Below the pieces are notes generated by a model. It did no database searches. It was not told where the DNA came from and was given only the letters and a program-made list of their open reading frames with translations. The position numbers and the translations under genes were made by a program. Shown here in pieces: positions 23,600-59,922 of a stretch of DNA of 64,000 nt (within the stretch, counting starts at the first letter, position 1; every line of letters starts with the position of its first letter). The stretch is from Podarcis melisellensis (lineage: Eukaryota). The stretch is from assembly GCA_964234715.1 (NCBI GenBank), contig OZ174278.1. The stretch is one strand, 5' to 3'.

Positions 23600-25300
23600 A
23601 TGCGGAGCTGCCGGCTTAAAAATGAGGGTCACGGCCACACGGTTCGCCCTAGTTCTCCTTTGTGGAGAACTGAAAGCCGCCCCTCTCCGCGCAGAACTGT
23701 GGCTGAAGCGAGGAGGAGACGCCGCCAGTTTGGAGAAGAACAGAAAACCAGCCGCGCCGCCGCTTCCCGGAAGCCTGCGAGGCGCTGGCCGGCCTCTCCC
23801 CCGTCACACACACGTGCGCTGCGGGCGGAGCGGCTGTCGGAGGGCATGTGCGCTCGGCTCACCAGGCCGGGGACTGGGGCGGGCGCTCGGCGGGGCGGTG
23901 CTGCCCTCAGCCGGGGAGAAGGAGTTATACAACCGCTCGGCGTTGCATAAGCGCCTGAGCCCGGAATAGTCTCAGCTGCCTGCTGGCGCGCTCCGGGAGC
24001 GAGGCCAGCGCCGCCCTGCTCTCCTCCCCCTGACCCCGACGCGCTCGCTCTCCTCGGGGGACGCCCCAGACGGAGCTGGCGGCGCGCCTTCCCCCCCGCG
24101 CAGCCCTTTCATAACGGCGTCCGTCCCAGCCCTGGCGGCCACCAGGCTCCTTGAACGAGGCGCGGCGGCTGCGAGGGGCCGCCTCTCCGCTTTCCTGCTC
24201 CTCGCGGAGGCGCTGAGCTCGACGATGAAGCCATAGCAGGAGCGCTCGCCGCCACCACCACACCCACCCAGGCAGCCAACCCGGCGAAAATGGAGCTGGG
24301 GGCCGCGCTCGGGCAGCAGGCGCAGCAGCGCGCCCACCACCACCAGGCCCCGTCGGCGGCAGGAGGAGGAGGCGGCGGCGGCGGACCCTGCGCGGAGATG
24401 TTGCAAGTGGCCGAGGAGGCTTTCCGAGGCGGGCAGTTCGCCCTGGCGGCGGAGATCCTGAGCTCGCAGCTGGCGGAGCTGGCGCAGCCCGAGCGGGGCC
24501 TTTGCCTCCGCCAAGGGGACGCGCTGGCCCGCGCGGGGCGCATGGCCGAGGCTCTGGATGCTTACAGCGCCGCCGCCCGGCTGGCCCGCCTGAGGCCCGA
24601 GGAGCTGCGCGAACTGACCGAGAGCTTCGCGCTCAGCCTCCGCGACAAAGAGCTGCGCCTGCCGCCGTGGCCTGGCGGCGGGGCAGCTCCGGAGGGAGAC
24701 GACCCGCTGGCGGACCCGCCTTGCTGCCGACCCCCGGAGCCGCTGGGCTGCCCGGTGTGCCGCCGCCTGCTCTGCGAGCCGGTGACTCTGCACTGCGGGC
24801 ACACCCACTGCAAGCGCTGCGCCCAGAGCGGCGGAGGCGAGTGCGCCCGCTGCGCCGCCCGGCGCCCAGCCTCTGCCGCTGCCCCGGCCGCGCAGCCCCC
24901 CGCCGGTCCCCGCGTCAACGTGGTCCTGGGCAGCCTGCTGGAGAAGTGGTTCCCGGCCGAGAGCAAAGCGCGCCGGCTGGGCGCCGAAGGGGACGCGCTG
25001 AAGGAGAGGCAGGAGCTGGCGGCCGCCCTGGAGAAGTACAACCAGGCCCTGGACCTCGGTGAGTGCTCGCCGTCGCGCACGCCCGACTCCTCCCCACAGA
25101 AGAAAGCTGCCCTGTCGCCTTTGGAAGCAGCAAGGGCAAACACCTTGTCAATATGCTCGGCGACGCTGCGCCACAACCCCGACCTGTGTTGCTTTGGCTC
25201 ACAAGGGGAGAAACAGGCCCAGTTGCGTTCCTGAGCTCCCTCCCTTATGTGGGAAGCGGATTAGGGATTTCCCGACGGGGAGAAAGCGCAGTGTAATGGG
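23600..25300. promoter_or_regulatory. CpG island / promoter and first exon of LONRF2
   Basis: Very GC- and CpG-rich block against a CpG-poor background; GC boxes (ggggcggg), ETS-like ccggaag, E-box cacgtg at 23811. Confidence 0.9.
24290..25058 (+). CDS. LONRF2: LON peptidase N-terminal domain and RING finger 2, exon 1 (TPR, first RING, TPR start)
   Basis: Strong Kozak aaaATGg; ...EEAFRGGQFALAAE...GLCLRQGDALARAGR...CPVC..CGHTHCKRC..CARC...RVNVVLGSLLEKWFP; donor G|gtgagt (phase 1). Downstream of CHST10, as for mammalian LONRF2. Confidence 0.93.
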
Positions 25301-40045: not shown

Positions 40046-40427
40046 TTGTTGTTGTTGTTGTTTAGTTGTGTCCGACTCTTAGTAACCCCATGGACCAGAG
40101 CACGCCAGGCACTCCTGTCTTCCACTGCTTCCTGCAGTTTGGTCAAACTCATGCTGGTAGCTTTGAGAACACTATCCAACCATCTTGTCCTCTGTCGTCC
40201 CCTTCTCCTTGTGCCCTCCATCTTTCCCAACATCAGGGTCTTTTCCAGGGAGTCTTCTCTTCTCATGAGGTGGCCAAAGTATTGGAGCCTCGGCTTCACA
40301 ATCTGTCCTTCCAGTGAGCACTCAGGGCTGATTTCCTTCAGAATGGATAGGTTTGATCTTCTTGCGGTCCATGGGACTCTCAAGAGTCTCCTCCAGCACC
40401 ATAATTCAAAAGCATCAATTCTTTGGC
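40046..40427 (-). mobile_element. BovB/RTE LINE 3' fragment
   Basis: Minus-strand QRIDAFELWCWRRLLRVPWTARRSNLSILKEISPECSLEG...RRRGRQRTRWLD; (CAA)n tail. Confidence 0.93.
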
Positions 40428-42431
40428 AAGCGAAGTCAAACTCACAATAATAGCTGCATGGTTCTATGAACATGCAGAGATCTTCCAGCACCTGTTATGT
40501 GATCCCTTTTAACTGGAGATGCCAGGAATTGAACCTGGGACCTTCCACATGTAAAGCAGATGCTCTCCTACTCAGCTACGATCCCTCCTCAAATAAACTG
40601 AAATCTGTGTTCGATTTTTACTTGGACTACTCCTTTTGCAGAACTAGAGTTTTGTCATTGTTGGTTGGGGGAACCCTGTAATTAGCATGTAGAGATGTGA
40701 TTTTTCTACTCGCCCGCCACCCTGCCCCTTGCAAAACAACAACAACAACAACCCAACAACTTTGCCCAGTTTCCCTCCTTGTGCTGTAAGGGCCCCAGCA
40801 GTCTCCTTTTGCTGCTTCCAGTGTGATTATTTCCTGCAAGCCTGGCATTGCACTCTGCCAGCATATGGGTTTAGGAGCAATCCTTACCCACCCAGGGCAG
40901 AAGCTCTGGCACAGCATTTTGTGAAACGGGCAGGATGTCAGCGTGATCTGTGCAGAATAAAGTGAGGATTCGCTTCAGCCATACTTGAATAGTTTCATGA
41001 ATCGTAACGGCATGAGTGTTCAAGCCCATGGAAGCTCTGGCATATTAGCGTTTAGTTTATGTGTCTGGTTAATGAAAGCCTACCTCTTTGCCGCAAATAG
41101 GTTTCCCCCTGTAACTTTGACAGCAGTTGCTGGTCTGCGCTCATGATTATGGAGAAATCGCCAAAAGGGATGTTGTTCCAATATAACCCTCCCCACTCCA
41201 AAAAAGTTCTTCAAAATCTACACATAATTAATGCTGCCAGTTACTTAACCCATTCTGCAGCACAGTGTAGTTTCCTAGTACCATTTATGCCCGGATCCAA
41301 TCTAGTATCAAACAACGTGGGTCACCTCTCAACCTTTGCTGTTTTGTGGGTGGGATTCAGCTGCACACCTGCAAATTAAATGGATTTTGGCAGTCTTGTA
41401 CAACCAACACGCTTCCAAAAGCCAAAACCTTTCTTTAAGTAAGGAAAGTGATGGGAAGATACACTGGAAAATGTGCGATAAGGGTTGAAATGACGCGACC
41501 TCATACAACCAAACAAATCAGGATGAATGTTCGGACCGAGTTATCTGGAAACAACCTTAAATATATTTCATATGCCGCACACAGCTTGTATCCCATTATG
41601 GTGGCATAATGTGGAGATCAGATAACAATTGAGGCCAAAATAACGCATGGCACAAAGTTGTGTGGATCTTTTGTCCTAGGTGAGAGGCATTGGGAGAAAG
41701 GATGAGCAGATTCTCCCCCATTTGTTCCCTCACTAAACCTAAGGCTTTTTTAAAGCTTGGGGGTGGGGGAAAAGAAAATACATTTAGGGAAAGACTGATG
41801 TAACTGCATATTATACACAGTCTCAGGCTGTTTTAAAACGCTTCCGTTGTGCTTGCACAAACATGTTTTGAATTGTGCTTAAAAATATCTTAAGTGCCCA
41901 TGTCTGTCACGTAGTTAGTCATGGTAAAACACATGTTCCTTGTAAGCTTTGGTAGACTGTGTGTGTGTTCCGTAGGTGATGTTAAAGTACTTGTTGAAAA
42001 CATGCCACACCTTCCTTAAGAGCGATCCTTGTTGAACCAGAATGGTTAAGACTTCCCCAACAACTTAGCCAAATATTTCTTTTCTGATTCACCCTTCATT
42101 GCTATAGATTTCACAGAGGAAAAAATACCCCCCCCCCTTTTTAAAGCATAAACCTTAAGATATCCACTAGCATATGTAGAACATATGTAGAAATGCCTGC
42201 AAAACTGTGGTTCAGAGCATTGGGGACAATGCTGATACAGAGTGTGGAAAGTTCAGCCTGAAATCTTACACCGACCAGGGTGGTTAGTCCAGATGTGATC
42301 CTCCAGATGGCCCTAGCTACCATGGCCAGTGGGATAATGGGATTTGTAGTCCAACAGCATCTGTAGCGTCACTGGTTACCTGCCCTTGCTATACATATTT
42401 ACCTGGCAGTAAGACCTGGCAGTAAGACCTA

Positions 42432-42796
42432 GGGACGCGGGTGGCGCTGTGGGTTAAAGCCTCAGCGCCTAGGGCTTGCCGATCGAAAGGTCGGCGGTTC
42501 GAATCCCCGCGGCGGGGTGCGCTCCCGCTGCTCGGTCCCAGCGCCTGCCAACCTAGCAGTTCGAAAGCACCCTCGGGTGCAAGTAGATAAATAGGGACCG
42601 CTTTCTAGCGGGAAGGTAAACGGCGTTTCCGTGTGCAGCTCTGGCTCGCCAGAGCAGCTATGTCACGCTGGCCACGTGACCCGGAAGTGTCTTCGGACAG
42701 CGCTGGCCCCTGGCCTCTTGAGTGAGATGGGCGCACAACCCCAGAGTCTGGCAAGACTGGCCCGTACGGGCAGGGGTACCTTTACCTTTACCTTTT
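42432..42796 (+). mobile_element. Young full-length Sauria SINE
   Basis: gggacgcgggtggcgctgtgggtt...ggttcgaatccc...(ccttta)n; TSD taagacct at 42423-30 and 42797-804; CpGs intact. Confidence 0.93.
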
Positions 42797-43463
42797 TAAG
42801 ACCTGTTGAACTCAGTGGGACTTAGATTTGAGTACAAATGCATAGGATCGAACCATCAGAGTATTTTACAGAGTGTCTACCGGACGTGTTTGCTAAACGG
42901 CATGAGTACCTGCTAGAAGCATAAATAACTTGACCATCAATGGTGTCATTCAATCTTCCATCTTCATCTGTTCGTACCTGTTGTCTAGCTTTTCATTAGG
43001 AACTGAGATGGTTTAGTCACATGCCTACTTAATTAGTTCCCTTTCAAAACATCTTTGTTCACAAAACTTGAGTACAGTTTCTAAGGACAGACTAAGAGAA
43101 CTGAGCCTGTGGGAGGCAAAGAGGAGCTGTAGACCAGTGTTTCCCAACCGGTGTTCCGCGGCACACTAGTGTGCCGCGAGACGTTGCCTGGTGTGCCGTG
43201 GGAGGGAGGCGGGCGAGTCGTATGTTACGCTTATAGATCTCCCCCTCTATGGTACTGGGGGAGTAAGGAGCGGCAGCAGCGGCGGCGGGAGCAACGGAAG
43301 GAAGCTCTCCGGCAGCTGCCGGAAGCTGGGAAGCGGCGCGGCTGCCGGCGGCGCTTCTAGTAGCTTCCAGACGCGCGGCGAGAGAGCGAGGGCGAGGGGC
43401 GCTCGCCAGCCAGCCAGCCAGCCGGGCAGAGGCAGAAGCGGCGAGTCCTTCAGCGAGGCGCTG

Positions 43464-43543
43464 ATGGCCAAGTGGGGAGAGGGAGATCCGCGCTGGATTG
43501 TGGAGCAGCGCGCGGATGCCACCAACGTCAACAACTGGCACTG
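43464..43543 (+). pseudogene. AHSA1: Captured first coding exon of AHSA1 (activator of Hsp90 ATPase 1) inside the hAT element
   Basis: ATG at 43464 gives MAKWGEGDPRWIVEQRADATNVNNWH(W), the Aha1 N-terminus with the NxNNWHW motif, followed by donor TG|gtgagc. No further AHSA1 exons seen. G-E-G-D-P-R fits AHSA1 better than AHSA2. Confidence 0.9.
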
Positions 43544-44369
43544 GTGAGCGAGGGGGGCAGGAAAGGCAGCGGGAGCTGGGGGGGGCGGAGGAGAAGTGGC
43601 TCGTGTTTGGCAGGGTGGGGATGCAGCTCTTCCCCTGAGGGCTTTGGGGGAATAAGGGCGGCCGTGCTGCCACCGCCACACCCACAGCCACCCACACCCC
43701 CGCGGTTGCGGGGACGCGTGTCTGTTTCTCTCTCCCTGTCTCTTGCCTCTGACCCCTTCGCACGAGATTCTCCACCGCTTATGCGTGTTCGCGCCGGAGT
43801 CACTTTCCTTCGGGTTTGGTGGACCTTACTCTCAAATAAGTGTGGTAAAAGATTACAAGCGCGGGGGGAGATAGAGAAACCTCCCTGGCCTGGTTTAACC
43901 TCCTTTTTAAAAAAAATAACAGCTGGATCTGTAGAAGGGCAGCTAGTGAGAGTTTGGGTGCTTTTTGGCACGGAAAAAGAAATATGATCGCTAGCTACTT
44001 CTTTCAGATCAAGCTGCACTGAAGTGCATGGGAGCTAGGGGCTGGTTAAAACAAACAAAAACGTTGGCAGTCTTTTCTAGGGGCCAGGTGCAGCATCTGG
44101 CAAAGCCAGCAAGTGCCTGCTGAATAAAAGTTTGCAACAGGGAGGCAGCCCCTCCACCTGTATCATAATCTGGTCTGCACAAGCACTCTCCAGAATAGGA
44201 AGCACCTTGTCAATTTTAATGGTGTGTTTGTGCTAACTAGCAATTCTGCCACATACAAATTAATGGCTGATTTGACAGCCAGATGGGTGGGGTATAAATA
44301 ATAAATTATTATTATTATTATATGAACTAGAATAATTTTTGTGTGCTGCTGTAAGAAAGTCATTTTTCT

Positions 44370-44876
44370 ATTGAAATGTTCACACTCACCAAGCAATGGC
44401 AAGGTGTTCACACTGCTGCACTGTGTGAGATAATAGGTAAACATTTAAAAACTCTCGAGGGGCAGTTGTCATTTTATTTCTCTTCAGTCTCCACTGAATG
44501 CCTTGACTGGGTTAGGGACCCTTATAGCTCAGCATCAGTTGGTGGAAAGGACATGACTTTACAGGAGCAGGAGGAACTAACTGAACTGAGACAAAATCGT
44601 GGTTTCAAGCTAAGATTTGCTGATCTACCTTTGGACAGTTTTTGGTTGGAAACTGCCAAGGAATTCCCCCTTCTGGCAAACAAAGCTATTTTGACATTGC
44701 TCCCATTTTCCACTACATATCTCTGTGAGTTGAGCTTTTCAAGCATGATTGCTATAAAAACTAAATACAGAGAGAGACTGAGAGCTGTTGACGAAGAGCT
44801 ACGTGTGTGTCTTTCTTCGATTCCAGCCAGAATATCAGCTTTGTGTTCAGCCAAACAGGCCCAGGTTGCGCACTGA
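44370..44876 (+). pseudogene. 5'-truncated hAT transposase (C-terminal dimerisation region, Buster/Charlie/ZBED5-like)
   Basis: Open frame with DWVRDPY...FW...[40 protein letters not shown]...ELRVCLS...QAQVAH*, typical of Buster-clade transposases; AATAAA immediately after the stop. Confidence 0.92.
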
Positions 44877-46077
44877 ATAAAGTATTTTATAATTTTTCAT
44901 ATTTCTGTTTACTTACTATTTCATAATAAAGTAATTATAAAATACTATCTTTGTGTTTATTTGATTCCTATTAAAGAGTGTTACTTTATATATAGTCAAT
45001 ATAGGCACAGAGTTAATTTTTTAAACATTTTCTAATGGTGGTGTGCCTCGATATTTTTTTCATGAAACAAGTGTGCCTTTGCCCAAAAAAGGTTGGGAAA
45101 CACTGCTGTAGACTTCAAAGTTCTAAGAGAGATATTAATCACATGAGTGGAGTCTTGCTGAAGTAGGTTTAGAGACTTAGCTCTGGTTTTCACCGGTGAC
45201 CTTCTGTTGCTTAATTAAGGAAGCCAATAAAGCCTTGAGTGCTTTTTCTCTATCTTTGAAGGGAAGCAGAGGGGTCTCTGCTTATAGTGAGGTCACTTCC
45301 AGACAAGCTTTGGTACAAGGTTTGTGGGGAGGTTATAAGATATTGGCTGCTTATTGCGCGTTCATCCTAATTTGTTTGCAATGAAGGCTATATAACATTG
45401 AACCAAGCAGTTGCTGTTCCAAACTTTCCAGTTGATTTTGATGCTGATTTTTAGTATATATAAAGAAAACCTTTATCGAAAGAATCCTCCTCCTAAATAT
45501 ATATGCATTGGGAATTTAAATTATATAATTCAGAAATAATAATGTATGAAAAATAATAGTAGACTGATGGCCTCAATCTGGATGAAGGGCCAATAATCAT
45601 TTTAATGATTTTAAAAATAAATACTGTTGCTTCTAAGCCTTCTTGTTTCTGCAGAGGAAGAGTTTGGTCTTCAGGAATTGTGAACCGTGAGCTAATATTA
45701 CCAATTAGTAAGCTTGCCAGCTACTAGAAACTTAAGCCCAAGGGTCATAGTGAAATGGCATGCCAAAGTGTTCTCATGTTTTATAATCCTTACAGAACCT
45801 GATGTCACACTGATCTCGAACTTGCCACATACAGCCCTTTTGAAAGCTGCCTGGCGATTAGCTAGGTAGCTCTAAAAATACAATGCTTTATATATGCAGT
45901 CTTTTAGCAGAGATGTGTGTCTCAACCCTCACATTCTTAAAAAGGAACGAATGCTATTATAAACAAGAGAGAGAGGAACTGATTATGTTTTGATTGTGCC
46001 TGTGTAAAACTAGCAAGATTTAATAATGCTAGACAAAAGTTTCCCTTACATTTTCTCATCTGCTGCTTATATTTCAG

Positions 46078-46196
46078 CTTCCTGTAAATGTTCGTTAATA
46101 GCACAGCGGGCAGAACTTTGTACAGCTATGAAGAATTATCAACAGGCTCTTTATGATGCAGAGGCACTCTGCCGAAATAAACCCCATTGGCCTAAG
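46078..46196 (+). CDS. LONRF2: LONRF2 exon 2 (TPR)
   Basis: tttcag acceptor; (A)SCKCSLIAQRAELCTAMKNYQQALYDAEALCRNKPHWPK; aag|gtacaa. Confidence 0.93.
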
Positions 46197-46345
46197 GTAC
46201 AAGGTTCATAAGCTGCTATGGGGGAGGTGGCAAATGTTTTTGTTTGCCTATGGGTAGCAAATATGAAATAATGAAATGCATGTTTCCCACAATTTTTTTG
46301 AAACTGAAATACATTGAGGTTTTTCTGTGTGTTATGTTCACACAG

Positions 46346-46468
46346 GGTCATTATGTGAAAGCACAAGCTCTTTCTGGATTAGGAAGGATTGAAGAAGCAT
46401 TGAAGGAATTTCTTTATTGTGTTGCCTTAAATCCTGAGTGGAGCTCAATGAAAATGGAAGCTCAGAAG
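46346..46468 (+). CDS. LONRF2: LONRF2 exon 3 (TPR)
   Basis: cacag|GHYVKAQALSGLGRIEEALKEFLYCVALNPEWSSMKMEAQK|gtagga. Confidence 0.94.
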
Positions 46469-47034
46469 GTAGGATAACTGTACCAACTTTGCATGTGGTC
46501 AGTGCAGGGAATAATATATGCAGGTGTGCATTTTGTGTTTTGCTAAAGGCTTCTGATGCACAGTTCTGCTGTTAACAGTGAGATTGTGTGTTAGTCATGG
46601 GTGTGGTTCTCACTGCCATGTTAATCAGCTCATGATAATTAGCAGAGGGATTTATAGCTTGAGTAGCTTGATCATTCCAATGAAACAATAGCCACTGTTG
46701 CTTGTGGATTTGCCTGCTGGTTAAAATAATCATGAAGACTGTGGTTTGCAGCTAATAGCCTTTGAAACCGTATCTAACCTGTGGATGTCCTCCAACTAGC
46801 TTACCAACCAGTGAAGGTCTCACATAGGCCACTACAGCTGCAGCTTTGCAGCTGATCTCTATAGCCCCCCCCCAACCTATAGTTCCTTCATTTCTAGTGT
46901 ATTATACTGTTCTGTCAAAGACCTCTAATCATTCACTTTATCAGACAAAACTATGTGCAGCCTGATTAGCACAGGCATTGGGCACAGCACCAGCACTGCT
47001 AACCAGAAGCTATTTGCAAGCTGGGTTTCTTACC

Positions 47035-47246
47035 CAGGAGATTCCAACTAAACATCAGGAAAAACTTTCTGACAGTAAGAGCTGTTTGACAGTGGAACGG
47101 TCTCCCTCGTAAGGTTGTGCACTCTCCTTCCTTGGAGGTTTTTAAAGCAGAGTTTGGATGGCCATCTCTCAGGGATGCTTTAACTGAGATTCCTGCATTG
47201 CAGAGAATTGGGGTTCCTTCCAGCTTTACAAATTCTGTGATTCTAT
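47035..47246 (+). mobile_element. CR1 LINE 3' fragment
   Basis: aggaaaaactttctgacagtaagagctgtt..cagtggaac...tctccttccttggaggttttt...ccttcca...ttctgtgattctat, the CR1 octamer tail. Confidence 0.85.
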
Positions 47247-47360
47247 CAAAGTCCTGAGAATAGGGTGAGATTGTTTCAGCCCCAAGACCACTCTAACCCG
47301 AGTAACTGCAACAGCATTTCAAAACTTGTTTCTTTCCCCCCTCTTTTTTTCTTTGTTTAG

Positions 47361-47522
47361 ATAATGTGTGAGATGTTTTTCCCAGCATTTGAAAACGTGC
47401 ACGATAATCTAACAACGCCTTTTTGTAATCGGACCTCGTATACAAGGTTGAAACCTGTGTTTCTAAGTAGCATAAACACACAGTCTTCTGGAGAAGATGG
47501 GTCAACTGCAGAGACCTCAAAG
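47361..47522 (+). CDS. LONRF2: LONRF2 exon 4
   Basis: tttag|IMCEMFFPAFENVHDNLTT...GSTAETSK|gtaagg; phase 0-0. Confidence 0.9.
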
Positions 47523-48052
47523 GTAAGGCTTACAACACGTATGCTTCAAAAATGAAAGTTGGGGATCAGAATATCACCTCCCTATCTGACTCTTTATTTA
47601 CTGAGGTTTAGAATACACTGGCAAAGTGATTACACCAGCACTTTGGAGCACAGTGTACAGAAGTTTCTCAGCTTTGGTCCTAGATCAGTAAAAGTCAGTA
47701 ACATGGTAGTTCACAAAGGAAGTGTTTTGCTAATGGGAAGAAAACGAAGTGAAAGAAACTGCCCACAAAAAACCGAAACTGTAAAGTTTTGCAAATTTGA
47801 GGAGTCCCATTTAAAGCATACTGGGGAGACTTGCAGTCTTGAGATACAAGCCAGAGCTCGTCTGTTCCAGTAATTATGTAAATAGAGCCCTGCATGAGCC
47901 ACTGTTCCACTGACTTGGATAATTATCCACTTAGTCCATTTTTATGTAACAGGGGTAGGAGATGATTTATAAGCAGCAGTTGTAAAGGTCATGCAACAGC
48001 GGTCTGTGAAACTGTTCCTGAATTGAAGATGCTGTTGTTGTATCTGTTTCAG

Positions 48053-48275
48053 GAGGCCAGCTTGAAGCTAACTAAAAACCTGTCCCAAGATGCTGATGCA
48101 TATCGAAGTACAGAGTCTTCTGTTTCTCATCATATACTGGACTTCTCTTTTGAAGACAACAAAAAAACTTTGGGAACGGTCCTCTCCAGTCTGCCTGGCG
48201 CAAGCTTAAAAAGAAAGTTTTCTAGTGATGGGGATTTACAGAGCTTGGGCGTCCCTATCAAAATTCCTCGAAAAG
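48053..48275 (+). CDS. LONRF2: LONRF2 exon 5 (linker with basic LKRK/PRK motifs)
   Basis: tttcag|EASLKLTKNL...FEDNKKTLG...SLKRKFSS...KIPRK g|gtgtgt. Confidence 0.88.
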
Positions 48276-48961
48276 GTGTGTTTTTTGAATGAGGATCTCT
48301 CCTTTTCCTTGCTTTGTAAGGAAATTCGCACTACTCTGCTTCTGTGGTTGGTAGGTTATTTTTCATTAAGAGCACCTGGACAATTTTTGCCATGAATACT
48401 GTAAGTTAAAAAGTTAAAAGTTTGTAATATATACACTGTTTAATGTAATAAGAGAATGCTCTTGCTGTAGAAAAAGGGTCACTAACAATCTTTTGGGACC
48501 AGCGGGCAAGTTTTGAATTTTGAGAAACCACATTCACACCTGTGCCATGAAGATGTGGCACAATGGCACATAGCTGCTTCAAAAGCCATCCGGGATAGCA
48601 CATAGCTGTTCTGCAGCAGCTTTCATTTGCTTTTGATGTTTTTCAGCAATTTCAGATATGAAAAATTAATTCATTATCTGTTCCTCCGGAGCTGGCGATA
48701 GCAATTCCAAATGATGTAAACACATGATTTTTCTGATAGGAAAATGGGTGCCTTACGCTGTGCTCTTTCCAATATCTACTTTAGCCTGCCCTTCTCTATA
48801 ATACTCTAAATTCAGTACTCCAGCAAACTCTTTGTGAACTGTTGGTTTAGTTAGTGAAAAAGCTCTTAATGCAGGATGACCTTGAACAATTAAAACTAAT
48901 AATAGGGCCCTTCAGTAAACCTTGCTGATTTTCAATGTGTGTTTTCTCTCTCTTTTTTAAG

Positions 48962-49061
48962 ATGGAGATGCTTCTTGCGAAAATCCCAACTCTCTTCCCT
49001 TAACAGCGATACCCGCAAGCCTTGTGGACGCATCTGATTTTGAGTGTTCCCTTTGCATGAG
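48962..49061 (+). CDS. LONRF2: LONRF2 exon 6 (start of second RING)
   Basis: ttttaag|(D)GDASCENPNSLPLTAIPASLVDASDFECSLCM(R)|gtatta. Confidence 0.92.
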
Positions 49062-50624
49062 GTATTAGCAATAAATGGACTAAATGTTGTTTGGAAAATA
49101 TTGTGTGGCATTTTAAAGGCGGAGGAAAGTGGGAAAGATCCTGTCTTATGCACACTAAGCTATTTAATTCATAATCTATCAATCTATCTACCCATGGAGG
49201 TGAGGAACCACTCATCAGCTGGAGGGCTGGATCTGAAAGTGGTCAACTTTCAGGCCACATTGACAGGATGGCCGACCTGCCAGTCACCCGATGCCATAAA
49301 AACCCCGAGCTCCTGAGTGCATCCTATATCCACTGAAAGCAGCATGACGGTGTAAGGTGCCAAATTCAAGCAGTGCCAAAGATAAAGGATCCGTCTGGAG
49401 TGTGCTGCAGGTTCTCCTGTTGCGACAGGGGATTTACCTTTGGGTGCTGCTCGTATCTGGCACCTTGCCCTGCTGTGCTAATTTTGGCAGGGATCAGGTA
49501 TGCTTGGAAGTGACACGGAACTCCTGAGCGTATTCAGTCCCTGCCGAAAGCAGCACAACAAGGTGCGGTGCCAAAGGAACGTCCTGTGAAATTGGGTGAC
49601 AGGCAGGTGGGGTGTAGCTCAGCTGAAAGGGCCTTGCAGGCCCTGAATGGAGAGAATCGGCGGTCCTCATGCTGATGCCCCCCTATCTTCAGCAAATCAG
49701 CACAACATTTTTTTATAGTGTATTTGTTGATTTGCAGAACTCGTAGGATTGTTCAGGCCAACAATGTGTCCTCAGAGGGCTTTTTTCTTCTTCAGCCTGA
49801 ACTCTCCAGAGCTCAGTTCTGGCACCTCTAAGGTGGGCACCTTTGCCATTATAAGTGAACAAGGGAGGTGTTCCTAGTGAGTTCTGGAACCTCTTTTTCT
49901 AGAAAAATAGCACTGGTCCTCCAGATGATTCTTGACTCTCAGCTCCCCTTCAGCCCTAGCCAGCCGTGCCAGTGGTCATGGAAGTTAGGTGCTGCAGTAC
50001 AAAAACTTCAGGAGGGCATCACATTGATTTCCTGTGGAATATGTGCTCTTTAGCTATTCTCAAACTCTTTTTTAAAAACCGAGCTCTCAGTCATATAGCT
50101 TATGAAATTACTTGCCTCGCCAAAAGTTGTGCAGTTGAATGTACCAGAGAGTGAGTTACTGCCACTGACATTTTGGGAGCAGCATTCAAAATTCATCAGG
50201 CACCAGGTGCGCTTCGCACCTGCCCATTGGCCACTTGCGACCAAGTGAAGATGCCCAGGTGCCAGGATGGTGCCTGACGTCTCCACCATCTGGAGGTGCA
50301 TGTCTGGGGATCCTTGGACCTTGACTCTTTTCACACACTAATACCGCATCCTGTAGAATTCTATCCATTATATTTTATCTGCACCATCAGAATAAATTTC
50401 AGGAACCCAAAAGTCGTATTGAAAACTTTTGAGCCATCTGACCCCAAAATGGTGACTGAACATTCTGTTTTGGTGACTGCAACCCTGGTATAAGGAACAA
50501 TTTGGCGTCTACCTTATATATATGAGTATCTTAGTATCTTAACACTGGAGAGCTGTTATTTGTACCTCATGAAATCACATATGCCTTTATTAACGTATGT
50601 GAAAATTCTGGAGTTGTGCTTTGA

Positions 50625-50843
<219 letters not shown>

Positions 50844-51167
50844 TAATACTTACTGTTAGCAAACCAGGTGCGGGGGGGGGGAGGGGGGCTGGCTTGCAAA
50901 ATAAGGAATTGGTGATGCAGAAGTAGGTGTGTTCCTTTGATAAAGGCCCTCAGGGTATGCAGGAAAACTTTCGGGTGTGGGTGAAATACCCTCCACTCAA
51001 AATTGCAGCAGGACACAAGGCTAGGCATGCTCAAGAGTTGCACAGCTCAGCTTAGTTTTATTTATATTTATTTAATATATTTATGTCCTTTCCCCCCCAA
51101 GTTTGGGAATCAACGTGGCTCGCAACGTTTTTAAAGCATCTTTATAAAATGCAAAGTAATGCAAAGA

Positions 51168-51295
51168 GTGTGGGATTCTTAATCTCCGGGTGGTGGGTTT
51201 GAGCTCCATGTTTTGCAAAACATTCCTGCATTGTAACGGGTTGGACTAGATGATCCTTCAGGTCCCTTCCAACTCTATAAAGTTGTGTGATTCTA
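51168..51295 (+). mobile_element. tRNA-Lys-headed short retroposon with a CR1 3' tail
   Basis: gggattcttaatctccgggtggtgggtttgagctcca (tRNA-Lys CTT-like) joined to attcctgcattg...gggttggactagatgat..cccttccaactct..tgattcta. Confidence 0.6.
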
Positions 51296-52345
51296 AACAG
51301 CTGTGAATAGAAGTTAGGCTGAAAGGAAGCAAGGTGTTTCTTATGTGCTACCCTTCAGCCTAAGCTCCCAGAGCGGATTTGGAGGCCAAAGGAGATCGAG
51401 CTGTACGCTTTCCCCCAAAAATTATTGCAGGGTCTGGAAGGCTTTCCTCTTGGGGGAACAACGAGGTTTTTCATTTGGTATGATGGCAAAGGGAAGGGAG
51501 GAAGCTCATGTACACACTCTTTAGCCCAGACACCGCTGAAGGGATTGGGCTATTGTGGACCTCCTGAGTCTTGGATCCACACACCCAATTCAAGAGAAGG
51601 TGTCAAATATTTCTGGAACTGGCCTCATGAACACTGAGCCTGCAGGGACTTGCCACACTCCTGCTATGTCTGAGCTGGACTCCTCCTGGCTGCAGCTGCT
51701 GCCCACACAGCCAGGAAACGTGGGGGAGGGATTAGTAGAGGAGCAAAACAACAACAACAACCCTCTTTTGGCAAGCTCCCTACCTATTAATGTGAATCTC
51801 ATTTTATAGCTGGGCATCTCAAAGAAGCTTGGCTAGCAAGATGTGAATATACTGAACAGCAGTAGTTAAACATGAATTATTTCCTCCAAGGTCGTTTTTG
51901 ACTACAAAAAAAGGAAAGCTTTACCACAATAATAGAATGGTTCCTGTTCTTTCTTTCTTTTTACAACATCTTCTGCAGATATAGTAATGAGTGCCCCCCC
52001 CCCTAGTTTGCTATCCCAGGTATCTGTCCTGGCTGTTGAAAACCCTTCCCTGCACTATACAGGATTGTGCCATCTTTGTGTATTTTGCACACACTTTTTC
52101 TTCTTCTCTTCAGACTTTAAGGCAAGGATGGCAGCGCCTGGGGCCTACAGATGATGTTGGAAGTCAGACTCCTGTCAGCATATCTAATGACAAGGGATTG
52201 TAGGAGTTGCCATCCAACAACATCTGCAGGCCCCCCACAGTGCTTTTAAAATATGGAAAGGTTTGGCTAACCACACTAACTTCATCACTAGATTCTGCCC
52301 CTAAGCCAGCTTTGTTACTGAGTTCTTGAATGCTTTCATTTTTAG

Positions 52346-52468
<123 letters not shown>

Positions 52469-52778
52469 TAAGCAGCCTTCCTATGAAAGAGAGGAGGGCA
52501 GGGGCGAAGGGGAAAAGCCTGTTACGATGTGTGCCTTGCTCATGATTGTGCTGGCTCATGATTTATTTCCTTCAAGCGCACCACAAGCAGTAGGCCAAGA
52601 ACAAACATGGAGTGCAGGCCTGCTCCAGTTGATTTTAAAACTGTGGATTAATGTTGCATGTGGGTGTGTCACTGATAGAAGGGAGGCCTAGGAAATAGGG
52701 AATAATAATGTCAACACAGCCAAGCTTATTTCATGGCAGGTTTCAGAAAATAGCATTTGGCTGCATGCGCTGATTTAA

Positions 52779-52961
<183 letters not shown>

Positions 52962-53637
52962 TAAGCAAAGGATTTGGAAGCAGACTTGAAAATACTAAAT
53001 TCCTGAAAGAGATGCTGGTGTTACGGAGTGTGTGTGTCTGAACCCACCTGTGTGTCCAGCACTCAGGTGTATTCATACACACACTACCAAGAACTTTTAA
53101 GGATCTATGGCTAGAGTTACGATGTGTGTTCGTTATGAATATGTGTTTATCCATAACCATGTGCCGACAAGAAGTTCTCACCCAAAAGGAATAAAGAAAG
53201 ATTGTTTTATTACATGTGTTGAAAGTGACTTGTCTGTATTACATGCTGCCTCAGATGACAAAACGACAATTCAAGCAGGCGGCAAATCCTGCAGCACATA
53301 CACACCTTGATCTAAAGAGTTAAAGAACTCCTAACTATTCCCCCTCAATAATCTCATGGGGAGTTGCAAAGTACTAAGAAAATCCAGCCATCTGAACGTA
53401 GTCCCTGCATTCTTCTAACACCAATGTTGCAGCCTTTCATCAGTCACAGAATAGGCAACCTTGTTCCACATGCATTGCATCTCTCTGATCACGTATATGC
53501 ACAATTTCTGCAAGAACCTTTTACAGCTTGATTCTAGACATGCTTATACATGGAACTGATGATTCCATATTGAATCAATGAAACACATTCCTTAAGTATG
53601 CTTAGAATTTTTAGGTATACTTAATACACAGAACTAA

Positions 53638-53841
<204 letters not shown>

Positions 53842-54301
53842 TGAGGCTTTTTGTTCTACACTTGCCTTCCAAGTATGCATCCTTTTATTTAATTAACTGC
53901 AAAATAAATTATGTTGGTTTTGGGTCCCCCCACCATTAGACAACCCCATCCTAACCTCTTAATACTAACCTCTCTTCATCTCTTGCCATTTTCTCCTTCT
54001 CTACCAACCATAGAACCTTCTTTCCCCAGTAGTTTAAGCCGTTTCCTTCCTCTCCTCTGCTCTGCATATTGGTCCACTAACATTAGGAAATTTAATATTT
54101 GATTACTTTGAATTGAAACACTATGCTCAACAAGTTTTGAAGAGACAGCATCATACCAAACTTCACAATGACTGGAAGCATATTCCTGGAGATGTTTATA
54201 ACTTTATTGTGTAGCATTCCTAGTTGTACATGCCCTGCACAGCCTGAAAAATATATCGAGTGAGAAAACATGAGTTTATAGCAGCAGCAGTTTGGGGAAA
54301 A

Positions 54302-54663
54302 GGGACGCAGGTGGCGCTGTGGGTTAAAGCCTCAGCGCCTAGGACTTGCCGATCGAAAGGTCGGCGGTTCGAATCCCTGCGGCGGGGTGCGCTCCCGCTG
54401 CTCGGTCCCAGCGCCTGCCAACCTAGCAGTTCGAAAGCACCTCCGGGTGCAAGTAGATAAATAGGGACCGCTTACCAGCGGGAAGGTAAACGCGTTTCTG
54501 TGTGCGGCTCTGGCTCGCCAGAGCAGCGATGTCACGCTGGCCACGTGACCCGGAAGTGTCTCCGGACAGCGCTGGCCCCTGGCCTCTTAAGTGAGATGGG
54601 CGCACAACCCCAGAGTCTGTCAAGACTGGCCCGTACGGGCAGGGGTACCTTTACCTTTACCTT
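54302..54663 (+). mobile_element. Young full-length Sauria SINE, nearly identical to the 42432 copy
   Basis: 12-bp TSD agtttggggaaa at 54289-54300 and 54664-54675; tRNA-like head and (ccttta)n tail. Confidence 0.94.
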
Positions 54664-56031
54664 AGTTTGGGGAAACAAGCAACATGAGAAATGGGAATTT
54701 CACTAAAATTGGTGGTTATAGGTACTGCTAGTAGTATTTAGTGGACAAATGTTAGAACTGGCATTTATAATCTGCCTGTAATTTGTATCATGCCTCTTAA
54801 ATAGTGGTGCTCTGCTTTAGATTGTGATAAGGCATTAGAAAGCTCTATATTGGATCACGCGTTCCTCAAGCATGCTTTGGTCACTGGCACTTAATCCTGT
54901 TAATTTCTGCAACTGGTTTCTCCAGCAGCACAACGTAAAGTTGTTCTCAGATAGAAGGAACAGATGAAGGCATAGAGAATAGGCTATCATTCTGATCTTG
55001 AAGGTTAAAATAACTTGAGCTCTGTGTTGAGTTTTGGAGAGAATACTAGAAATAGATCTCTTATTACATGCAGAGCAAGAGTTAGCAGCAGAAAAAAATC
55101 ATTTGTTCAAATATACTCAAATTACAACTCATTTCGTAAGGGTCTTTTACCAGTTTATTTGCCTAATATCCACTCTGTAAAGAGACTTACCTCCCATCCT
55201 CCACATCAGTCATGGGCATCGGGGAGAATACAGATGACTGTTTAGCAAGTGGCATTTCAAACAGCGTGCATATATATAATCGCTCACTGTTGATTGCCAT
55301 CTTTCCATCCTTCAAAAGGAGGATTGAAAGCTTACCAGACCAGAGGTTGCTAATCTGCAACACGATTGTGTAAATAATTGAAAGCACATACACACATTAT
55401 TCACTGTATCAGAAGGGCACTAATGCAGCACTAAACCATGAGAATAACAAGCTTTGGAAATGCTTGAGGTGACAGGGAGTTGGTTCCTCCCAGAATCTGG
55501 TAGAATTCCACTTTTTAGTTTGCAAATTCCGCTACCTCAAAATATGGCAGAACCTTCTTTTGTATCAAGGGCGCCATTTTGATTCCCATGCGAATGTCTG
55601 GACAAAAGCTTTGCCATAAAACAGTGGCTCGAGAAGTTTCCACGTGAAGCAGATGTGTGTAAAATTGTACGCTTGTGCTTCATGCACTTTGTTGAACTCT
55701 CTACTCTTCACTTTCCATCCTTCCCCTAAGAAGGTTGTCCTTGTGGATGACTGTCCCTTTTAAATACAGTGAAATCCTCTTAAGGCAGAAGCCACATTGA
55801 GTCAAGGAGGTTTGATCTGCCTTAAGAATAGCACCCAAATGCATGAAGGCTATGGGAGAGCTCGCAGACCCATTGCGCTGTTAGAAGCAGTCGCTGAGTT
55901 TAAGGATCTAGGAGGGGAGATAGCAAGTTAGGCTCAGTGGTAAGAGATGGAAGTTTTGACTTTTTAGGTGGCTGCCACAAGGTTCCAGTACAAAGAAATT
56001 GCTTCCCCATGCTAGCAGGCCTTGGGGAATA

Positions 56032-56273
56032 TAGTCATACCTCATGTTGCGTTAGGTTCATGTTGCGTCTTTTCGGCTTGCGAACGCGGCAAACCCAGAA
56101 GTGTCTACTTCTGGGTTTTGCCGTGTGTGTGTGCACAGAAGCTTTCTGCGCGCTATGCGCAGAAGTGTTCTGCGTGCTTCGCACATGCGCAGAAGCGGTG
56201 CTCCAGTTACGGGCTTTTTGGGGTGCGAGCGGCACCCCGGAACAGATCGAGTCTGTAACTAGAGCTACCACTG
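56032..56273. mobile_element. Tigger-like MITE with internal palindromes
   Basis: Degenerate TIRs tagtcatacctc / gagctaccactg|ta; internal inverted repeat ggcaaacccagaagt..acttctgggttttgcc. Confidence 0.6.
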
Positions 56274-57593
56274 TAATGTTCTTCCTTGAATAATTGGGAG
56301 GAGCCACTCATTTCAGTCAGAAAGTTTCTTCTGTATAACTGCTTCTATAAGGTGTGGGTGTCATGCTTCCGTTACGATGGTTTTTGAATTATATTTAGTT
56401 TATTGTATTGTGTTGAGTGGTTTGCTGTTAATCTATTTTTTGGGGGGGGGGTTGCAGATGCCTGTTTTATTGCATTGATTTTAATAATCTGATTTGGAAT
56501 ATTTTTTACTGTTGCTGTTGAAGTATGGTGGAGCTTATTTTTTTTACAGTTGTTTTTAATGTTTCATTCATTTAGGAAAAAATATATACCCTTAATGAAA
56601 TATCTACACACATCAATTAATATAAGGTGATCAATAATACACAGATAAAAACCAACATTTTAAAAACATGCATACATAATAGTGATCTGTGTCTGGATAG
56701 GTTTGCTGAATTAAAAGTTTTAGCTGGCTTCTCAAAAAGTATAGAAACAAGTTCCTGTCTAACATTTAAAATATACATATATATTTGTAACCTATGTTTT
56801 AAATTGTTTTAAAAAACAATTTATATTGGTCTTTAAACAAATACAATTAGCATTAAACACTTATCCAGCAGTACATCTGATGGTGTTCGTTTTATCTATT
56901 GTCTCTAGACATACACTTACACATTCAACATTCAGACGAAAAGTTATCTAAAGCAGTTAGTATAAAAAAACCCAAACGAAATGAACACCTTTACCACCCA
57001 AAGGATCTCTGTTTCGCTTTTGAAGGAGAAAGTTTGTGGCCCTTGTGATTGCAAAGCAAGTGTTGGTGGGTTTTTTACACAAACTTATTGCAGTTTCTGC
57101 CACACACTTAGGGGACAGAATGGGTCTGAGTAGAGCTTTCAGGCAGTACACCTTCTCTAGGCTACACTGTCCTCTGCCCCAGTGCCCATTTTAGCTCAAA
57201 AATCCAGTTACTGTGGCCCAAGTCATTTTGAAAGTGGCTTAACTGTTTAGGCAGCACTTTAGGGCCTTAACCACACTTACCCTTTGCTCCGTTTTTTTCC
57301 AGGCACAGGTCCACACTTTCCTGGTCTGTGTCCAAGTGCTCTTCCCCCCCACCCCGATCTTTACCAGTTAAAACCCACTCTTTAAAGCTGAATCGGAGCA
57401 AACAGCTATTCAGATATTCCCTGGATTGCCTTTTGCTCCAATTCATCTTTCAAGAGTGGGTTTTTGCGGGGGAAATTCTGAAGCAAAAAGGGGGGCACTC
57501 GAAATAAACCCTCATTCATATTATCTGCCTTGTTTTTGTCACGCTGCAAATGAGAGAAACGTGACTTTGAATCCCTTTTTGTGCATTGTGCAG

Positions 57594-57743
57594 GTTGAAG
57601 GGGCAGAGTATGAAGAACTTGTCCGCCTTCATGATTCAGTCTATGATCAAGCTGTCGCCTGGTTTACTTCTCTTAAAGACAACATGAAAGCGCAAATTCT
57701 GAACCACTTTGGGTCCATGCCAGGGAAGGAGCCTGAGCCACAG
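57594..57743 (+). CDS. LONRF2: LONRF2 exon 11
   Basis: tgcag|VEGAEYEELVRLHDSVYDQAVAWFTSLKDNMKAQILNHFGSMPGKEPEPQ|gtaagt. Confidence 0.96.
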
Positions 57744-59015
57744 GTAAGTGCTATACATACCACAAGTCTCCATTCAAAAAGATGTTCATGGATCAGAACG
57801 TCTAAGATCATGGAGTTTTGCAGGGAGGTGGACCAGAGGTTCCTTTCACCCTTCCTCTGAAAGCGTGGGGAAATTCCTGGAGACCAATCCTGCAGACCAA
57901 AGCTTGCTGCTTGAAAGTGTGGAGCAGCAGGGCCCAGGAAATGTGCTGTATAGGGATAGGGTCCATGCAAACCACATCCCTAGGCCCCAACAAAGGAATA
58001 TAAACCTAATAGACATCCAGTGATGACATCCAGTGACGACACATACACACCCCGTCCCTAAAACAACAGCAGAATTCTCAGAGCTGAAATTTGTAAGAAG
58101 TTCAATTTACTAAATTGAGAAAGTGTCAAAGATAGGAGCGTGCGGAGTACGTTTTTCACCAGGGGCCAAGTATGCATTATATGCAAATGTGCCTTAGAAC
58201 CAACCCCCTTTCTTTAAAAAAGAAAAATAACTTTGGGAAGAAGAAATTTGGAATGGAGAGACAGCAGGGGAAGTGCTTAACCCCCACCGCCCACCCCTTG
58301 CCACTGCCAAATTGCTCCCTGACTGCTTTTCCCTCTATGAGGTTCCAGCACACATTTATGAGGCAGTTAGGATGAGAAAACCTGCTACTTCTCTCTGCTC
58401 CAAATACCTCCTCCCAAAACTGTTTTTCTGCCAAAAAAAAAAAGATAAATTAGAGGGGGAATGGCTCTAATTCATGCTGTTGTTCAAGTTGGGGGAAGTG
58501 TTACAGGTAATCCACCGTTAGATTTTTCAAGAGAGAGAGGGAGGGAGAGACTGTCCTTCTGCCCTAAAAATACATATATTGGTAGCTAGTTGCTATACTA
58601 AACTGTGGTCTATGCTCCCTTGCTTCTGGGAGTAAAACAACAACCACCACCTTTAAAAACATCTAGTTAAATATCCGCCACCAATAAATCTTGCACATTT
58701 GGATTACCACCCAGGGAGAATCCATTAAGATGTTAAATCCTCATTTGTGTCATAATTACATTTGGACTTGCTCACATAGACTGATAACTCATTTTAACAG
58801 ACAGACATTGGAGCAAATTTTGTACGGGCTTCAGTTTAGCTTTGTTTCCTTGGTCTGTTTTTGTGCATTAGCCTTTTCTGAGATTATAAACCAATCATTT
58901 TGTGCTAGTACAAGTGAAAGTACAGCCTTATCAGTAACACGGGACTGTTCTATCGAAACAGTTACAGAGATCTTCCTTTGACGATTGCACTTGAGAGACC
59001 ACATAGTGAGTGGTT

Positions 59016-59016
<1 letters not shown>

Positions 59017-59051
<35 letters not shown>
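59017..59051. repeat. (GT)n microsatellite
   Basis: Direct reading. Confidence 0.95.
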
Positions 59052-59052
<1 letters not shown>

Positions 59053-59733
59053 AGAACACACTCTGGAAATTTTAGAAAGGAGCAAATCTGCATGAATGAT
59101 CAGTGTTGTTCTTAGTTCAGCTTTTAGTGCTCAAAACTGCTTAAAGCCAGAATGGAAAAAGCAATTCTCATTAAAGGAAAAATCTCCACCCGTGTTTTTC
59201 TTCCTATTTCATCAACAAAGATTGTGGGATGGCCTCAAGATGTCCATTCCTATAATGCCAACTGTATGATTTCACATGGGCTTTTAACCTAAACATGGTA
59301 GTGGATGACTTAGATGTACATTCAGTCTCTTTAAACAAATACACATTCTCTGTCTCTCTCTTTCTCTCTAACTATCATGATAAACACCAGTATTACAACA
59401 GACCAAAGGTTATTGTCATACCATAGCTTTGTTTGTTCCTATTCTGTGCCAATTATTTTTAGCCAGGTATAATTTTGTCTTAGACAGAGATCAAGCTAGA
59501 AATAGAAATAGTTTCAGAAATGAGAGTGCTCTTTTGGTTTTAGTTTTAACTCCCTGTTATAGTACTGTTTTCTCCAAAAGATGGGTTGGTGAGAGGAATA
59601 GAGGGTCTGTTCTCACTGTCGGTCGCCTGAGGATTTTGCAGAATGCGGTATTTTGGATCACCCTATAAATAGTAAGACATTTTAGTGCAGAGGGTTGTTG
59701 TTTAGATTTTTCTATAAATATTAAGCACGTTAA

Positions 59734-59922
<189 letters not shown>

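What the first reader, a model, noticed from the sequence alone, without database searches (positions are those of the whole stretch)
43260..46196. Transplanted AHSA1 promoter/exon 1 may drive a chimeric, N-terminally truncated LONRF2 transcript
Seen: the captured exon is in sense orientation inside LONRF2 intron 1, keeps a consensus donor (TG|gtgagc, 43544), and the next LONRF2 acceptor is exon 2 at 46078. The donor is phase 2 and exon 2 begins in phase 1. Joining them gives ...NWHC-F-L-stop (TGC TTC CTG TAA), turning the AHSA1 exon into a 29-aa uORF. An in-frame LONRF2 ATG follows at 46128 (gctATGa, MKNYQQAL), with an out-of-frame ATG at 46088 in between. Reinitiation at 46128 would give a LONRF2 lacking the first TPR and RING but keeping RING2 and the Lon-N domain. 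In-frame fusions are only possible to the phase-2 acceptors (50675, 52802, 53661). Inference: the transposon delivered a ready-made promoter plus first exon into a ubiquitin ligase gene. The sequence alone cannot show that it is used.
Basis: inference. Interest (0 to 1): 0.75.

Follow-up and report, generated by a model that had tools for sequence, protein, structure and literature searches.

The report
Transposon-borne first exon inside lizard LONRF2
A small cut-and-paste transposon carrying the start of an Hsp90 co-chaperone gene sits, pointing the right way, in the first intron of a lizard ubiquitin-ligase gene, so a hybrid RNA is possible. Nothing here shows that the RNA is made, and its default form would not encode a fusion protein.

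Summary

- **Element:** a 1971-bp non-autonomous hAT element lies at 43135-45105, with perfect 15-bp inverted ends and an 8-bp target duplication. It sits in sense in intron 1 of a LONRF2-type gene.
- **Cargo:** its 1167-bp cargo (43204-44370) holds CpG-island-like DNA and an Aha-type first coding exon (ATG 43464, exon end 43543, phase 2) with its splice donor.
- **Frame claims:** Splicing to exon 2 (46078) gives a 29-codon upstream ORF that stops at 46085-87. An out-of-frame ATG abuts that stop. The in-frame ATG at 46128 would give a 460-residue LONRF2 without RING1. Only the acceptors at 50675, 52802 and 53661 are frame-compatible.
- **Not tested:** whether the captured promoter fires. No indexed run on record as RNA holds the stretch.

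My reading is that the element is most likely a young intronic passenger that is silent or gives non-productive RNA.

The design matches the known bat Helitron/NUBPL exon trap. The scan has already noted several hAT carriers of promoters and first exons elsewhere in this genome. I rate it a new member of a known kind, of modest interest unless transcripts are found.

The parts
43127..43134 (.). left copy of the 8-bp target site duplication (CTGTAGAC)
   Evidence: identical to 45106-45113 and directly abutting the terminal repeat
43135..43203 (+). hAT 5' end, including the 15-bp terminal inverted repeat 43135-43149
   Evidence: perfect match on both strands; 69 bp match the 5' ends of hAT copies L001 and L002
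43204..43463 (+). captured upstream region and 5' leader of an Aha-type co-chaperone gene; the putative promoter
   Evidence: GC 0.69, CpG observed/expected 1.01; no match to hAT copies; ETS-like and heat-shock-element-like motifs read by eye; activity not tested
43464..43543 (+). captured first coding exon (26 codons plus 2 bases, phase 2), followed by a GT donor at 43544
   Evidence: a 20-residue N-terminal peptide plus the seven-residue Aha motif, as described for Ahsa1 in PMC11316058
43544..44370 (+). rest of the cargo: presumed start of the source gene's intron 1, GC-rich to about 43870 and AT-rich after
   Evidence: the source locus was not available for comparison
44371..45105 (+). hAT 3' part: remnant transposase C-terminus (ORF 44376-44876), AATAAA at 44876 and 44925, 3' terminal repeat 45091-45105
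   Evidence: 86-90% to L001 and L002 over 735 bp; 92% amino-acid identity to FAM200A-like / ZBED5-like proteins; weak hAT dimerisation hit
44488..44724 (+). hypothetical cryptic exon inside the hAT remnant (acceptor-like site before 44488, donor-like GTGAGT at 44725); 237 nt, open, frame-preserving between LONRF2 exons 1 and 2
   Evidence: inference only, no transcript evidence
45106..45113 (.). right copy of the target site duplication
24290..25058 (+). LONRF2 exon 1 (coding part) in its own CpG island; encodes TPR and RING1; ends in phase 1
46078..46196 (+). LONRF2 exon 2 (phase-1 acceptor); holds the predicted upstream-ORF stop 46085-87, out-of-frame ATG 46088 and in-frame ATG 46128
46346..59922 (+). 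remaining LONRF2 coding exons: 46346-46468, 48053-48275, 48962-49061, 50675-50789, 52346-52467, 52802-52960, 53661-53823, 57594-57743, 59764-59919, then the stop

Best explanation
A young, internally deleted hAT transposon of the FAM200/ZBED5-like (Buster-type) kind has had its middle replaced by about 1.2 kb of host DNA. That DNA comes from the 5' end of an Aha-type Hsp90 co-chaperone gene: 260 bp upstream of the ATG, the first coding exon with its donor, and the start of intron 1. The element sits in LONRF2 intron 1 in the gene's own direction. It has everything a natural exon trap needs on paper.

The most likely state is a neutral intronic passenger. Either the captured CpG-rich fragment is silent, or it gives low-level RNA that does not change the LONRF2 protein. 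The default splice (43543 to 46078) is out of frame. It turns the captured exon into a 29-codon upstream ORF that ends early in exon 2.

Shown: the anatomy, the frames and the hAT identity. Inferred: silence or low output, sensitivity to nonsense-mediated decay, and poor re-initiation.
For: - Real insertion: inverted ends and target duplication.
- Cargo limits and hAT identity.
- Frame arithmetic for the junction and for all LONRF2 exons.
- Translation outlook: the stop of the upstream ORF is 109 nt before the exon 2/3 junction. An out-of-frame ATG directly follows the stop, and the in-frame ATG is only 40 nt further. By established rules of scanning, re-initiation and exon-junction-dependent decay, this predicts little protein.
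- Competing signals: four AATAAA and one ATTAAA, plus strong acceptor-like sites, lie inside the element between the donor and its 3' end. Two more AATAAA and further acceptor-like sites lie between the element and exon 2.
- Sequencing runs: no indexed run on record as RNA holds the stretch. The small runs that hold 0.2-0.28 of its words match the share made up by the multicopy hAT ends, about 26%.
- Precedent: of the many Helitron-borne NUBPL promoter copies in bats, only three gave transcripts that start in the insert (PMC4778049).
Against: - The cargo keeps a full CpG-island signature (observed/expected 0.84 over 667 bp). It also keeps an intact start codon, an intact coding exon and its native donor. 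CpG-dense housekeeping promoters often stay active at new sites.
- Because the insertion looks very young, CpG retention says nothing either way about methylation.
- No read data were seen, so silence is assumed, not shown.
Confidence: 0.6

Rival explanations
1. The captured fragment is an active alternative promoter. Its transcripts splice from 43543 to LONRF2 exon 2 and exist as a detectable hybrid RNA. That RNA is mainly a carrier of the upstream ORF (effectively a new 5' leader, partly degraded) and yields little or no truncated LONRF2.
For: Sense orientation, the native donor, and exon 2 as the next constitutive acceptor. CpG-island composition with ETS-like and heat-shock-element-like motifs. 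The bat HelibatN3 element of the same design traps exons when mobilised, and its bona fide transcripts mostly gain a new 5' leader (PMC4778049).
Against: No transcript evidence. Only 260 bp lie upstream of the ATG, with the native start site unknown. The intragenic position and the transposon context favour silencing. Polyadenylation signals and other acceptors lie in the way.
Confidence: 0.22
2. As above, and ribosomes re-initiate at ATG 46128. This gives a 460-residue LONRF2 that lacks the N-terminal TPR and RING1 but keeps RING2 and the Lon N-terminal domain, with a function of its own.
For: The ATG at 46128 is in frame and has a purine at -3. The downstream exons encode RING2 and the LON substrate-binding domain. 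Short upstream ORFs can permit re-initiation (established knowledge).
Against: Only 40 nt separate the stop from this ATG. An out-of-frame ATG abuts the stop, and its 22-codon ORF overlaps 46128. The transcript should be prone to decay. There is no evidence of expression or of selection.
Confidence: 0.05
3. The element acts on LONRF2 through its own transposase-derived signals rather than through the cargo. LONRF2 exon 1 would splice to the acceptor-like site before 44488. One outcome ends at the transposase stop and AATAAA (44874-44881), giving a RING1-TPR protein fused to a hAT C-terminal fragment. The other leaves again at the donor-like site 44725, giving a 79-codon in-frame cassette.
For: The site before 44488 has 14 of 17 pyrimidines and a CAG. 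It is a phase-1 acceptor like exon 2, and the frame it opens is the open hAT frame. GTGAGT lies at 44725 and AATAAA overlaps the ORF's stop. Capture of transposase exons by host genes through splicing is documented in vertebrates (10.1101/2020.05.07.082677).
Against: The site lies inside a continuous transposase ORF in full-length copies, so it is not a known exon border. One frame in three fits by chance. There is no transcript evidence.
Confidence: 0.08
4. The arrangement is an assembly artefact, or a chance resemblance to an Aha-type gene.
For: No independent read support was seen, because the reads call failed.
Against: Perfect inverted ends with an abutting perfect 8-bp duplication are the signature of a real hAT insertion. 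DNA runs from other samples hold 0.55-0.81 of the stretch's words. The 27-residue reading fits the literature description of the Ahsa1 N-terminus.
Confidence: 0.02

Closest known systems
HelibatN3 Helitrons carrying the NUBPL promoter, first codons and splice donor (vespertilionid bats; PMC4778049, PMC4224331)
   Same: A DNA transposon carries a host promoter region, a few N-terminal codons and a splice donor. In an intron in sense orientation it can splice to the next acceptor and give N-terminally truncated or new-leader transcripts.
   Different: That is a rolling-circle Helitron with thousands of copies, exon trapping shown experimentally, and three native transcripts documented. Here the carrier is a cut-and-paste hAT, one copy was examined, and no transcript was shown.
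Pack-type TIR transposons (Pack-MULEs of rice; PMC5861414)
   Same: A non-autonomous TIR element whose interior is replaced by GC-rich host gene DNA from a gene's 5' end.
   Different: Those are Mutator superfamily elements in plants with 9-11-bp duplications, many of them transcribed. Here the element is hAT superfamily, in a vertebrate, with an 8-bp duplication.
Other hAT carriers of CpG-island promoters and first exons noted by this scan in the same lizard genome (UBE2G1, DCLK2, ATP6V0A2, SIX5 and EIF3B-like cargos)
   Same: Same genome and the same kind of cargo (promoter-like DNA, first exon, donor) in hAT elements. One parallel note (ATP6V0A2 cargo upstream of NOP14) also found no transcript evidence.
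   Different: Different cargo and host site. Those are unchecked AI notes and I did not test them.
Host-transposase fusion genes formed by splicing into intronic DNA transposons (10.1101/2020.05.07.082677)
   Same: An intronic hAT in sense orientation, with an open transposase-derived frame compatible with the upstream host exon.
   Different: Known fusions mostly use the DNA-binding domains of transposases and are expressed and conserved. Here only a C-terminal remnant is left, and use is purely hypothetical.
Horizontally transferred and cargo-bearing hAT families of Anolis carolinensis (PMC3014272)
   Same: Young 2-3-kb hAT families in a lizard, and non-autonomous copies that incorporate extraneous DNA.
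   Different: The extraneous DNA described there is other transposon fragments. Capture of a host promoter or exon is not mentioned in that text.

Membership tests
hAT superfamily DNA transposon (non-autonomous) | Short terminal inverted repeats flanked by an 8-bp target site duplication | tested here: met
   15/15 inverted ends; 8/8 duplication abutting both ends
hAT superfamily DNA transposon (non-autonomous) | Sequence relationship to hAT transposase-bearing elements; no complete transposase of its own | tested here: met
   The ends match copies L001 and L002. The 166-residue remnant is 92% identical to FAM200A-like / ZBED5-like proteins, with a weak Dimer_Tnp_hAT hit at E 0.034, below the Pfam cut-off. 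There is no N-terminal transposase part.
Pack-type (gene-fragment-carrying) transposon | Interior made of host gene DNA rather than transposon DNA | tested here: inconclusive
   43204-44370 has no match in hAT copies, and the exon fits the Ahsa1 N-terminus as described in PMC11316058. The source locus was not available. The AHSA1 versus AHSA2 question and the origin of 43871-44370 are open.
Pack-type (gene-fragment-carrying) transposon | Mobilised with its cargo (further copies with the same cargo elsewhere) | not tested
   The reads call failed. Exact-protein look-ups found nothing.
Transposon-borne promoter / exon trap (HelibatN3-NUBPL type) | Cargo holds first exon and functional-looking donor, in sense inside a host intron | tested here: met
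   exon 43464-43543, GT at 43544, same strand as LONRF2, between exons 1 and 2
Transposon-borne promoter / exon trap (HelibatN3-NUBPL type) | Transcripts start in the insert and splice to downstream host exons | not testable with these tools
No holder on record as RNA.
LONRF2 (LON peptidase N-terminal domain and RING finger protein 2) | TPR, RING, RING and LON N-terminal (substrate-binding) domains in this order | tested here: met
   Pfam hits per exon. The frame-consistent 733-codon model was checked by arithmetic.
LONRF2 (LON peptidase N-terminal domain and RING finger protein 2) | Orthology to LONRF2 rather than LONRF1 or LONRF3 | tested here: inconclusive
   The only gene-named hit to exon 1 is a turtle protein called LON peptidase N-terminal domain and ring finger 2 (73% identity). 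No tree or synteny test was done.

The most novel reading that the evidence does not exclude
The captured co-chaperone promoter is active, possibly stress-inducible, at this site. It drives a lineage-specific LONRF2 isoform that lacks RING1. This would be one visible case of a lizard hAT family acting as a natural exon-trap vector, scattering housekeeping promoters and first exons into other genes.
Probability: 0.07. Interest if true: 0.6.

Novelty: new member of a known kind. Interest (0 to 1): 0.3.

Why it matters
If the captured promoter fires, this would be a vertebrate cut-and-paste transposon rewiring a ubiquitin-ligase gene with a ready-made housekeeping promoter and first exon. Until now that mechanism has been documented mainly for bat Helitrons and plant Pack-MULEs. 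As it stands, the locus is a clean, well-delimited example of the raw material for such rewiring, and an easy RT-PCR target. It is not evidence that rewiring happened. The predicted default product, an RNA carrying an upstream ORF and prone to decay, argues against a protein-level effect.

Tried and rejected
1. **Read laying, the decisive test.** This also ruled out searching the captured exon's peptide against solved structures or protein databases.
2. **Exact-protein look-ups.** Look-ups of the hAT remnant ORF and of the 69-residue ORF across the 5' hAT/cargo junction found nothing on record.
3. **Scan findings by sequence.** A search with the cargo's intron part came back blank, which means nothing.
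4. **Word search with LONRF2 exon 1.** It gave only relatives at 80% identity or less (one hit reached 85%, but over only 35% of the query) and no spliced transcripts. Hit P0130 proved to be a frame-shifted genomic reading, so I ran no further search on it.
5. **A faulty query of mine.** The second query was one base out of frame (43465 instead of 43464). Its empty result is void.
6. I did not build or search a joined spliced model; exons were handled one by one and phases were checked by arithmetic. The costly representative search was not used, because no claim here rests on absence of relatives.
Full report
**What is there**

Reading 42800-46400 shows a transposon with perfect 15-bp inverted ends, CAGTGTTTCCCAACC at 43135-43149 and its complement at 45091-45105. 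These are the only exact matches in the window. Identical 8-bp copies of CTGTAGAC abut it at 43127-34 and 45106-13. An 8-bp duplication with short inverted ends is the hAT signature.

The element's 166-residue ORF (44376-44876) is 92% identical to proteins named FAM200A-like or ZBED5-like in a garter snake and a gecko. It gives a weak hAT dimerisation hit, below the Pfam cut-off.

I fetched the snake and gecko loci and compared them locally, leaving out 43512-43550. The results were:
- 43135-43203 matches their 5' ends.
- 44371-45105 matches their 3' parts at 86-90%.
- The 1167 bp in between (43204-44370) match nothing there.

So the element is an internally deleted hAT whose interior was replaced by foreign DNA. 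The cargo lies in the same direction as the transposase gene, and both point the same way as LONRF2.

**The cargo**

- 43204-43870 is CpG-island-like: GC 0.65 and CpG observed/expected 0.84, rising to 1.01 in the 260 bp before the ATG.
- The rest, 43871-44370, is AT-rich and CpG-poor.
- The ORF listing and the sequence place an ATG at 43464. After it come 20 codons, then a seven-residue motif, then a break after two bases of a codon (exon end 43543), followed by GT at 43544.

This layout, a conserved 20-residue N-terminal peptide directly followed by the family's signature motif, is what PMC11316058 describes for metazoan Ahsa1. From memory, marked as such, the human AHSA1 N-terminus differs at one of these 27 residues, and the paralogue AHSA2 is similar. 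I therefore call the exon Aha-type. AHSA1 itself is likely but was not tested.

Because the donor and intron-like sequence are present, the capture was of genomic DNA, not of an mRNA copy.

**The host gene**

Ten further coding exons follow exon 1 on the + strand, located by open frames, splice signals and Pfam hits.

- Exon lengths sum to 2199 nt, or 733 codons, and the phases agree at every junction. I checked this by arithmetic only.
- Exon 1 holds TPR and RING1. Later exons hold RING2 and the LON substrate-binding domain.
- The only gene-named hit to exon 1 is a turtle protein called LON peptidase N-terminal domain and ring finger 2.

| Claim | Result |
|---|---|
| End of LONRF2 exon 1 | 25058, phase 1 |
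| Exon 2 acceptor | 46078, phase 1 |
| Captured donor | phase 2 |
| Hybrid junction | three codons, then a stop at 46085-87, making a 29-codon upstream ORF |
| ATG 46088 | abuts the stop, out of frame; opens a 22-codon ORF that overlaps the next ATG |
| ATG 46128 | in frame, purine at -3; would give 460 residues lacking the exon-1 TPR and RING1 |
| Frame-compatible acceptors | only 50675, 52802 and 53661 |

Use of any of those three acceptors would need four to seven constitutive exons to be skipped. The first would also cut RING2 in half. All this confirms the observation.

**What could not be tested**

Everything hinges on whether RNA starts in the cargo.

- The run search listed no holder on record as RNA.
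- The small runs labelled 'RNA?' hold 0.2-0.28 of the sampled words. That is about the share of the stretch made up by the multicopy hAT ends (26%), so they probably hold other copies of the transposon family rather than this locus. This is an inference.
- Larger runs of three other organism labels hold 0.55-0.81. This argues that the stretch is real DNA.

**Most likely mechanism, and its limits**

On paper this is an exon trap of the same design as the bat HelibatN3 Helitron. That element carries the NUBPL promoter, six codons and a donor, and it traps downstream exons when mobilised. Yet only three native transcripts were found to start in such inserts (PMC4778049).

Three considerations lower the odds of a protein effect here:
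1. Only 260 bp precede the ATG, and the native start site is unknown. 'Ready-made promoter' is therefore plausible (ETS-like and heat-shock-element-like motifs, CpG density) but not shown.
2. The default product is out of frame. Its stop lies 109 nt before the next exon junction, which by the usual rule exposes it to nonsense-mediated decay. Re-initiation 40 nt downstream, past an abutting out-of-frame ATG, should be inefficient.
3. Competing signals lie between the donor and exon 2. Inside the element are four AATAAA and one ATTAAA, including the transposase's own signal overlapping its stop codon at 44876, and strong acceptor-like sites, notably before 44488. Two more AATAAA and further acceptor-like sites lie between the element and exon 2.

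CpG retention cannot be read as evidence of an unmethylated state. The perfect ends and duplication show the insertion is very young, and the transposon's own 5' end is equally CpG-rich.

My estimates are as follows.

| Outcome | Probability |
|---|---|
| Silent or negligible passenger | about 0.6 |
| Detectable but non-productive hybrid RNA | about 0.2 |
| Effects through the element's own splice or polyadenylation signals | about 0.1 |
| Functional truncated LONRF2 | about 0.05 |

**A side reading**

The acceptor-like site before 44488 is phase 1, like exon 2, and opens the still-open hAT frame. LONRF2 exon 1 could therefore in principle read into the transposase remnant. It could also include a 237-nt frame-keeping cassette (44488-44724) if the GTGAGT at 44725 is used. 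This is the route by which host-transposase fusions arise (10.1101/2020.05.07.082677). Here it is purely hypothetical.

**Context and novelty**

Earlier unchecked notes of this scan describe several hAT elements in this same lizard genome that carry CpG-island promoters and first exons of other genes. They include one parallel case in which no hybrid transcript was found. Plant Pack-MULEs likewise duplicate GC-rich sequences and insert preferentially at gene 5' ends (PMC5861414). Lizard hAT families are known to take up extraneous DNA (PMC3014272).

The present locus is thus a new member of a known kind. It is well delimited and easy to test, but it has no evidence of use.

Noticed in passing
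window 44376-44876; proteins P0001-P0026: The remnant hAT transposase C-terminus is 92% identical at the protein level to sequences annotated in a snake, a gecko and also a spider (Trichonephila clavata). It is 70-80% identical to sequences from a bryozoan, a tunicate, a sea slug and fishes. This spread suggests a horizontally transferred hAT family, or contamination in some assemblies.
   Followed up: partly
L002:3574-6134: The gecko copy is about 2.56 kb between matching ends and carries two adjacent ORFs (338 and 281 residues, FAM200-ZBED5 RNase-like and FAM200-GTF2IRD2-like). It may be a near-complete autonomous relative of the window's element, with one frame break.
   Followed up: no
window 42420-42790: A CpG-rich tRNA-derived SINE-like sequence lies about 350 bp upstream of the hAT insertion. 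It explains the raised GC and CpG of the left flank (CpG observed/expected 0.62 over 42135-43134).
   Followed up: partly
window 40009-40491 (- strand): A 160-residue ORF that looks, from memory, like the C-terminal part of a LINE (BovB/RTE-like) ORF2, inside LONRF2 intron 1.
   Followed up: no
It encodes the first cysteine pair of RING2. Without it the gene model is out of frame.
   Followed up: yes
window 43290-43375: ETS-like (CCGGAAG) and imperfect heat-shock-element-like (TTC..G.A..TTC..GA) motifs in the captured upstream region, as another first-stage note says. They fit a stress-responsive housekeeping promoter, but I only read them by eye.
   Followed up: partly
window 5460-5614: The only run of N in the window (155 bases).
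   Followed up: no
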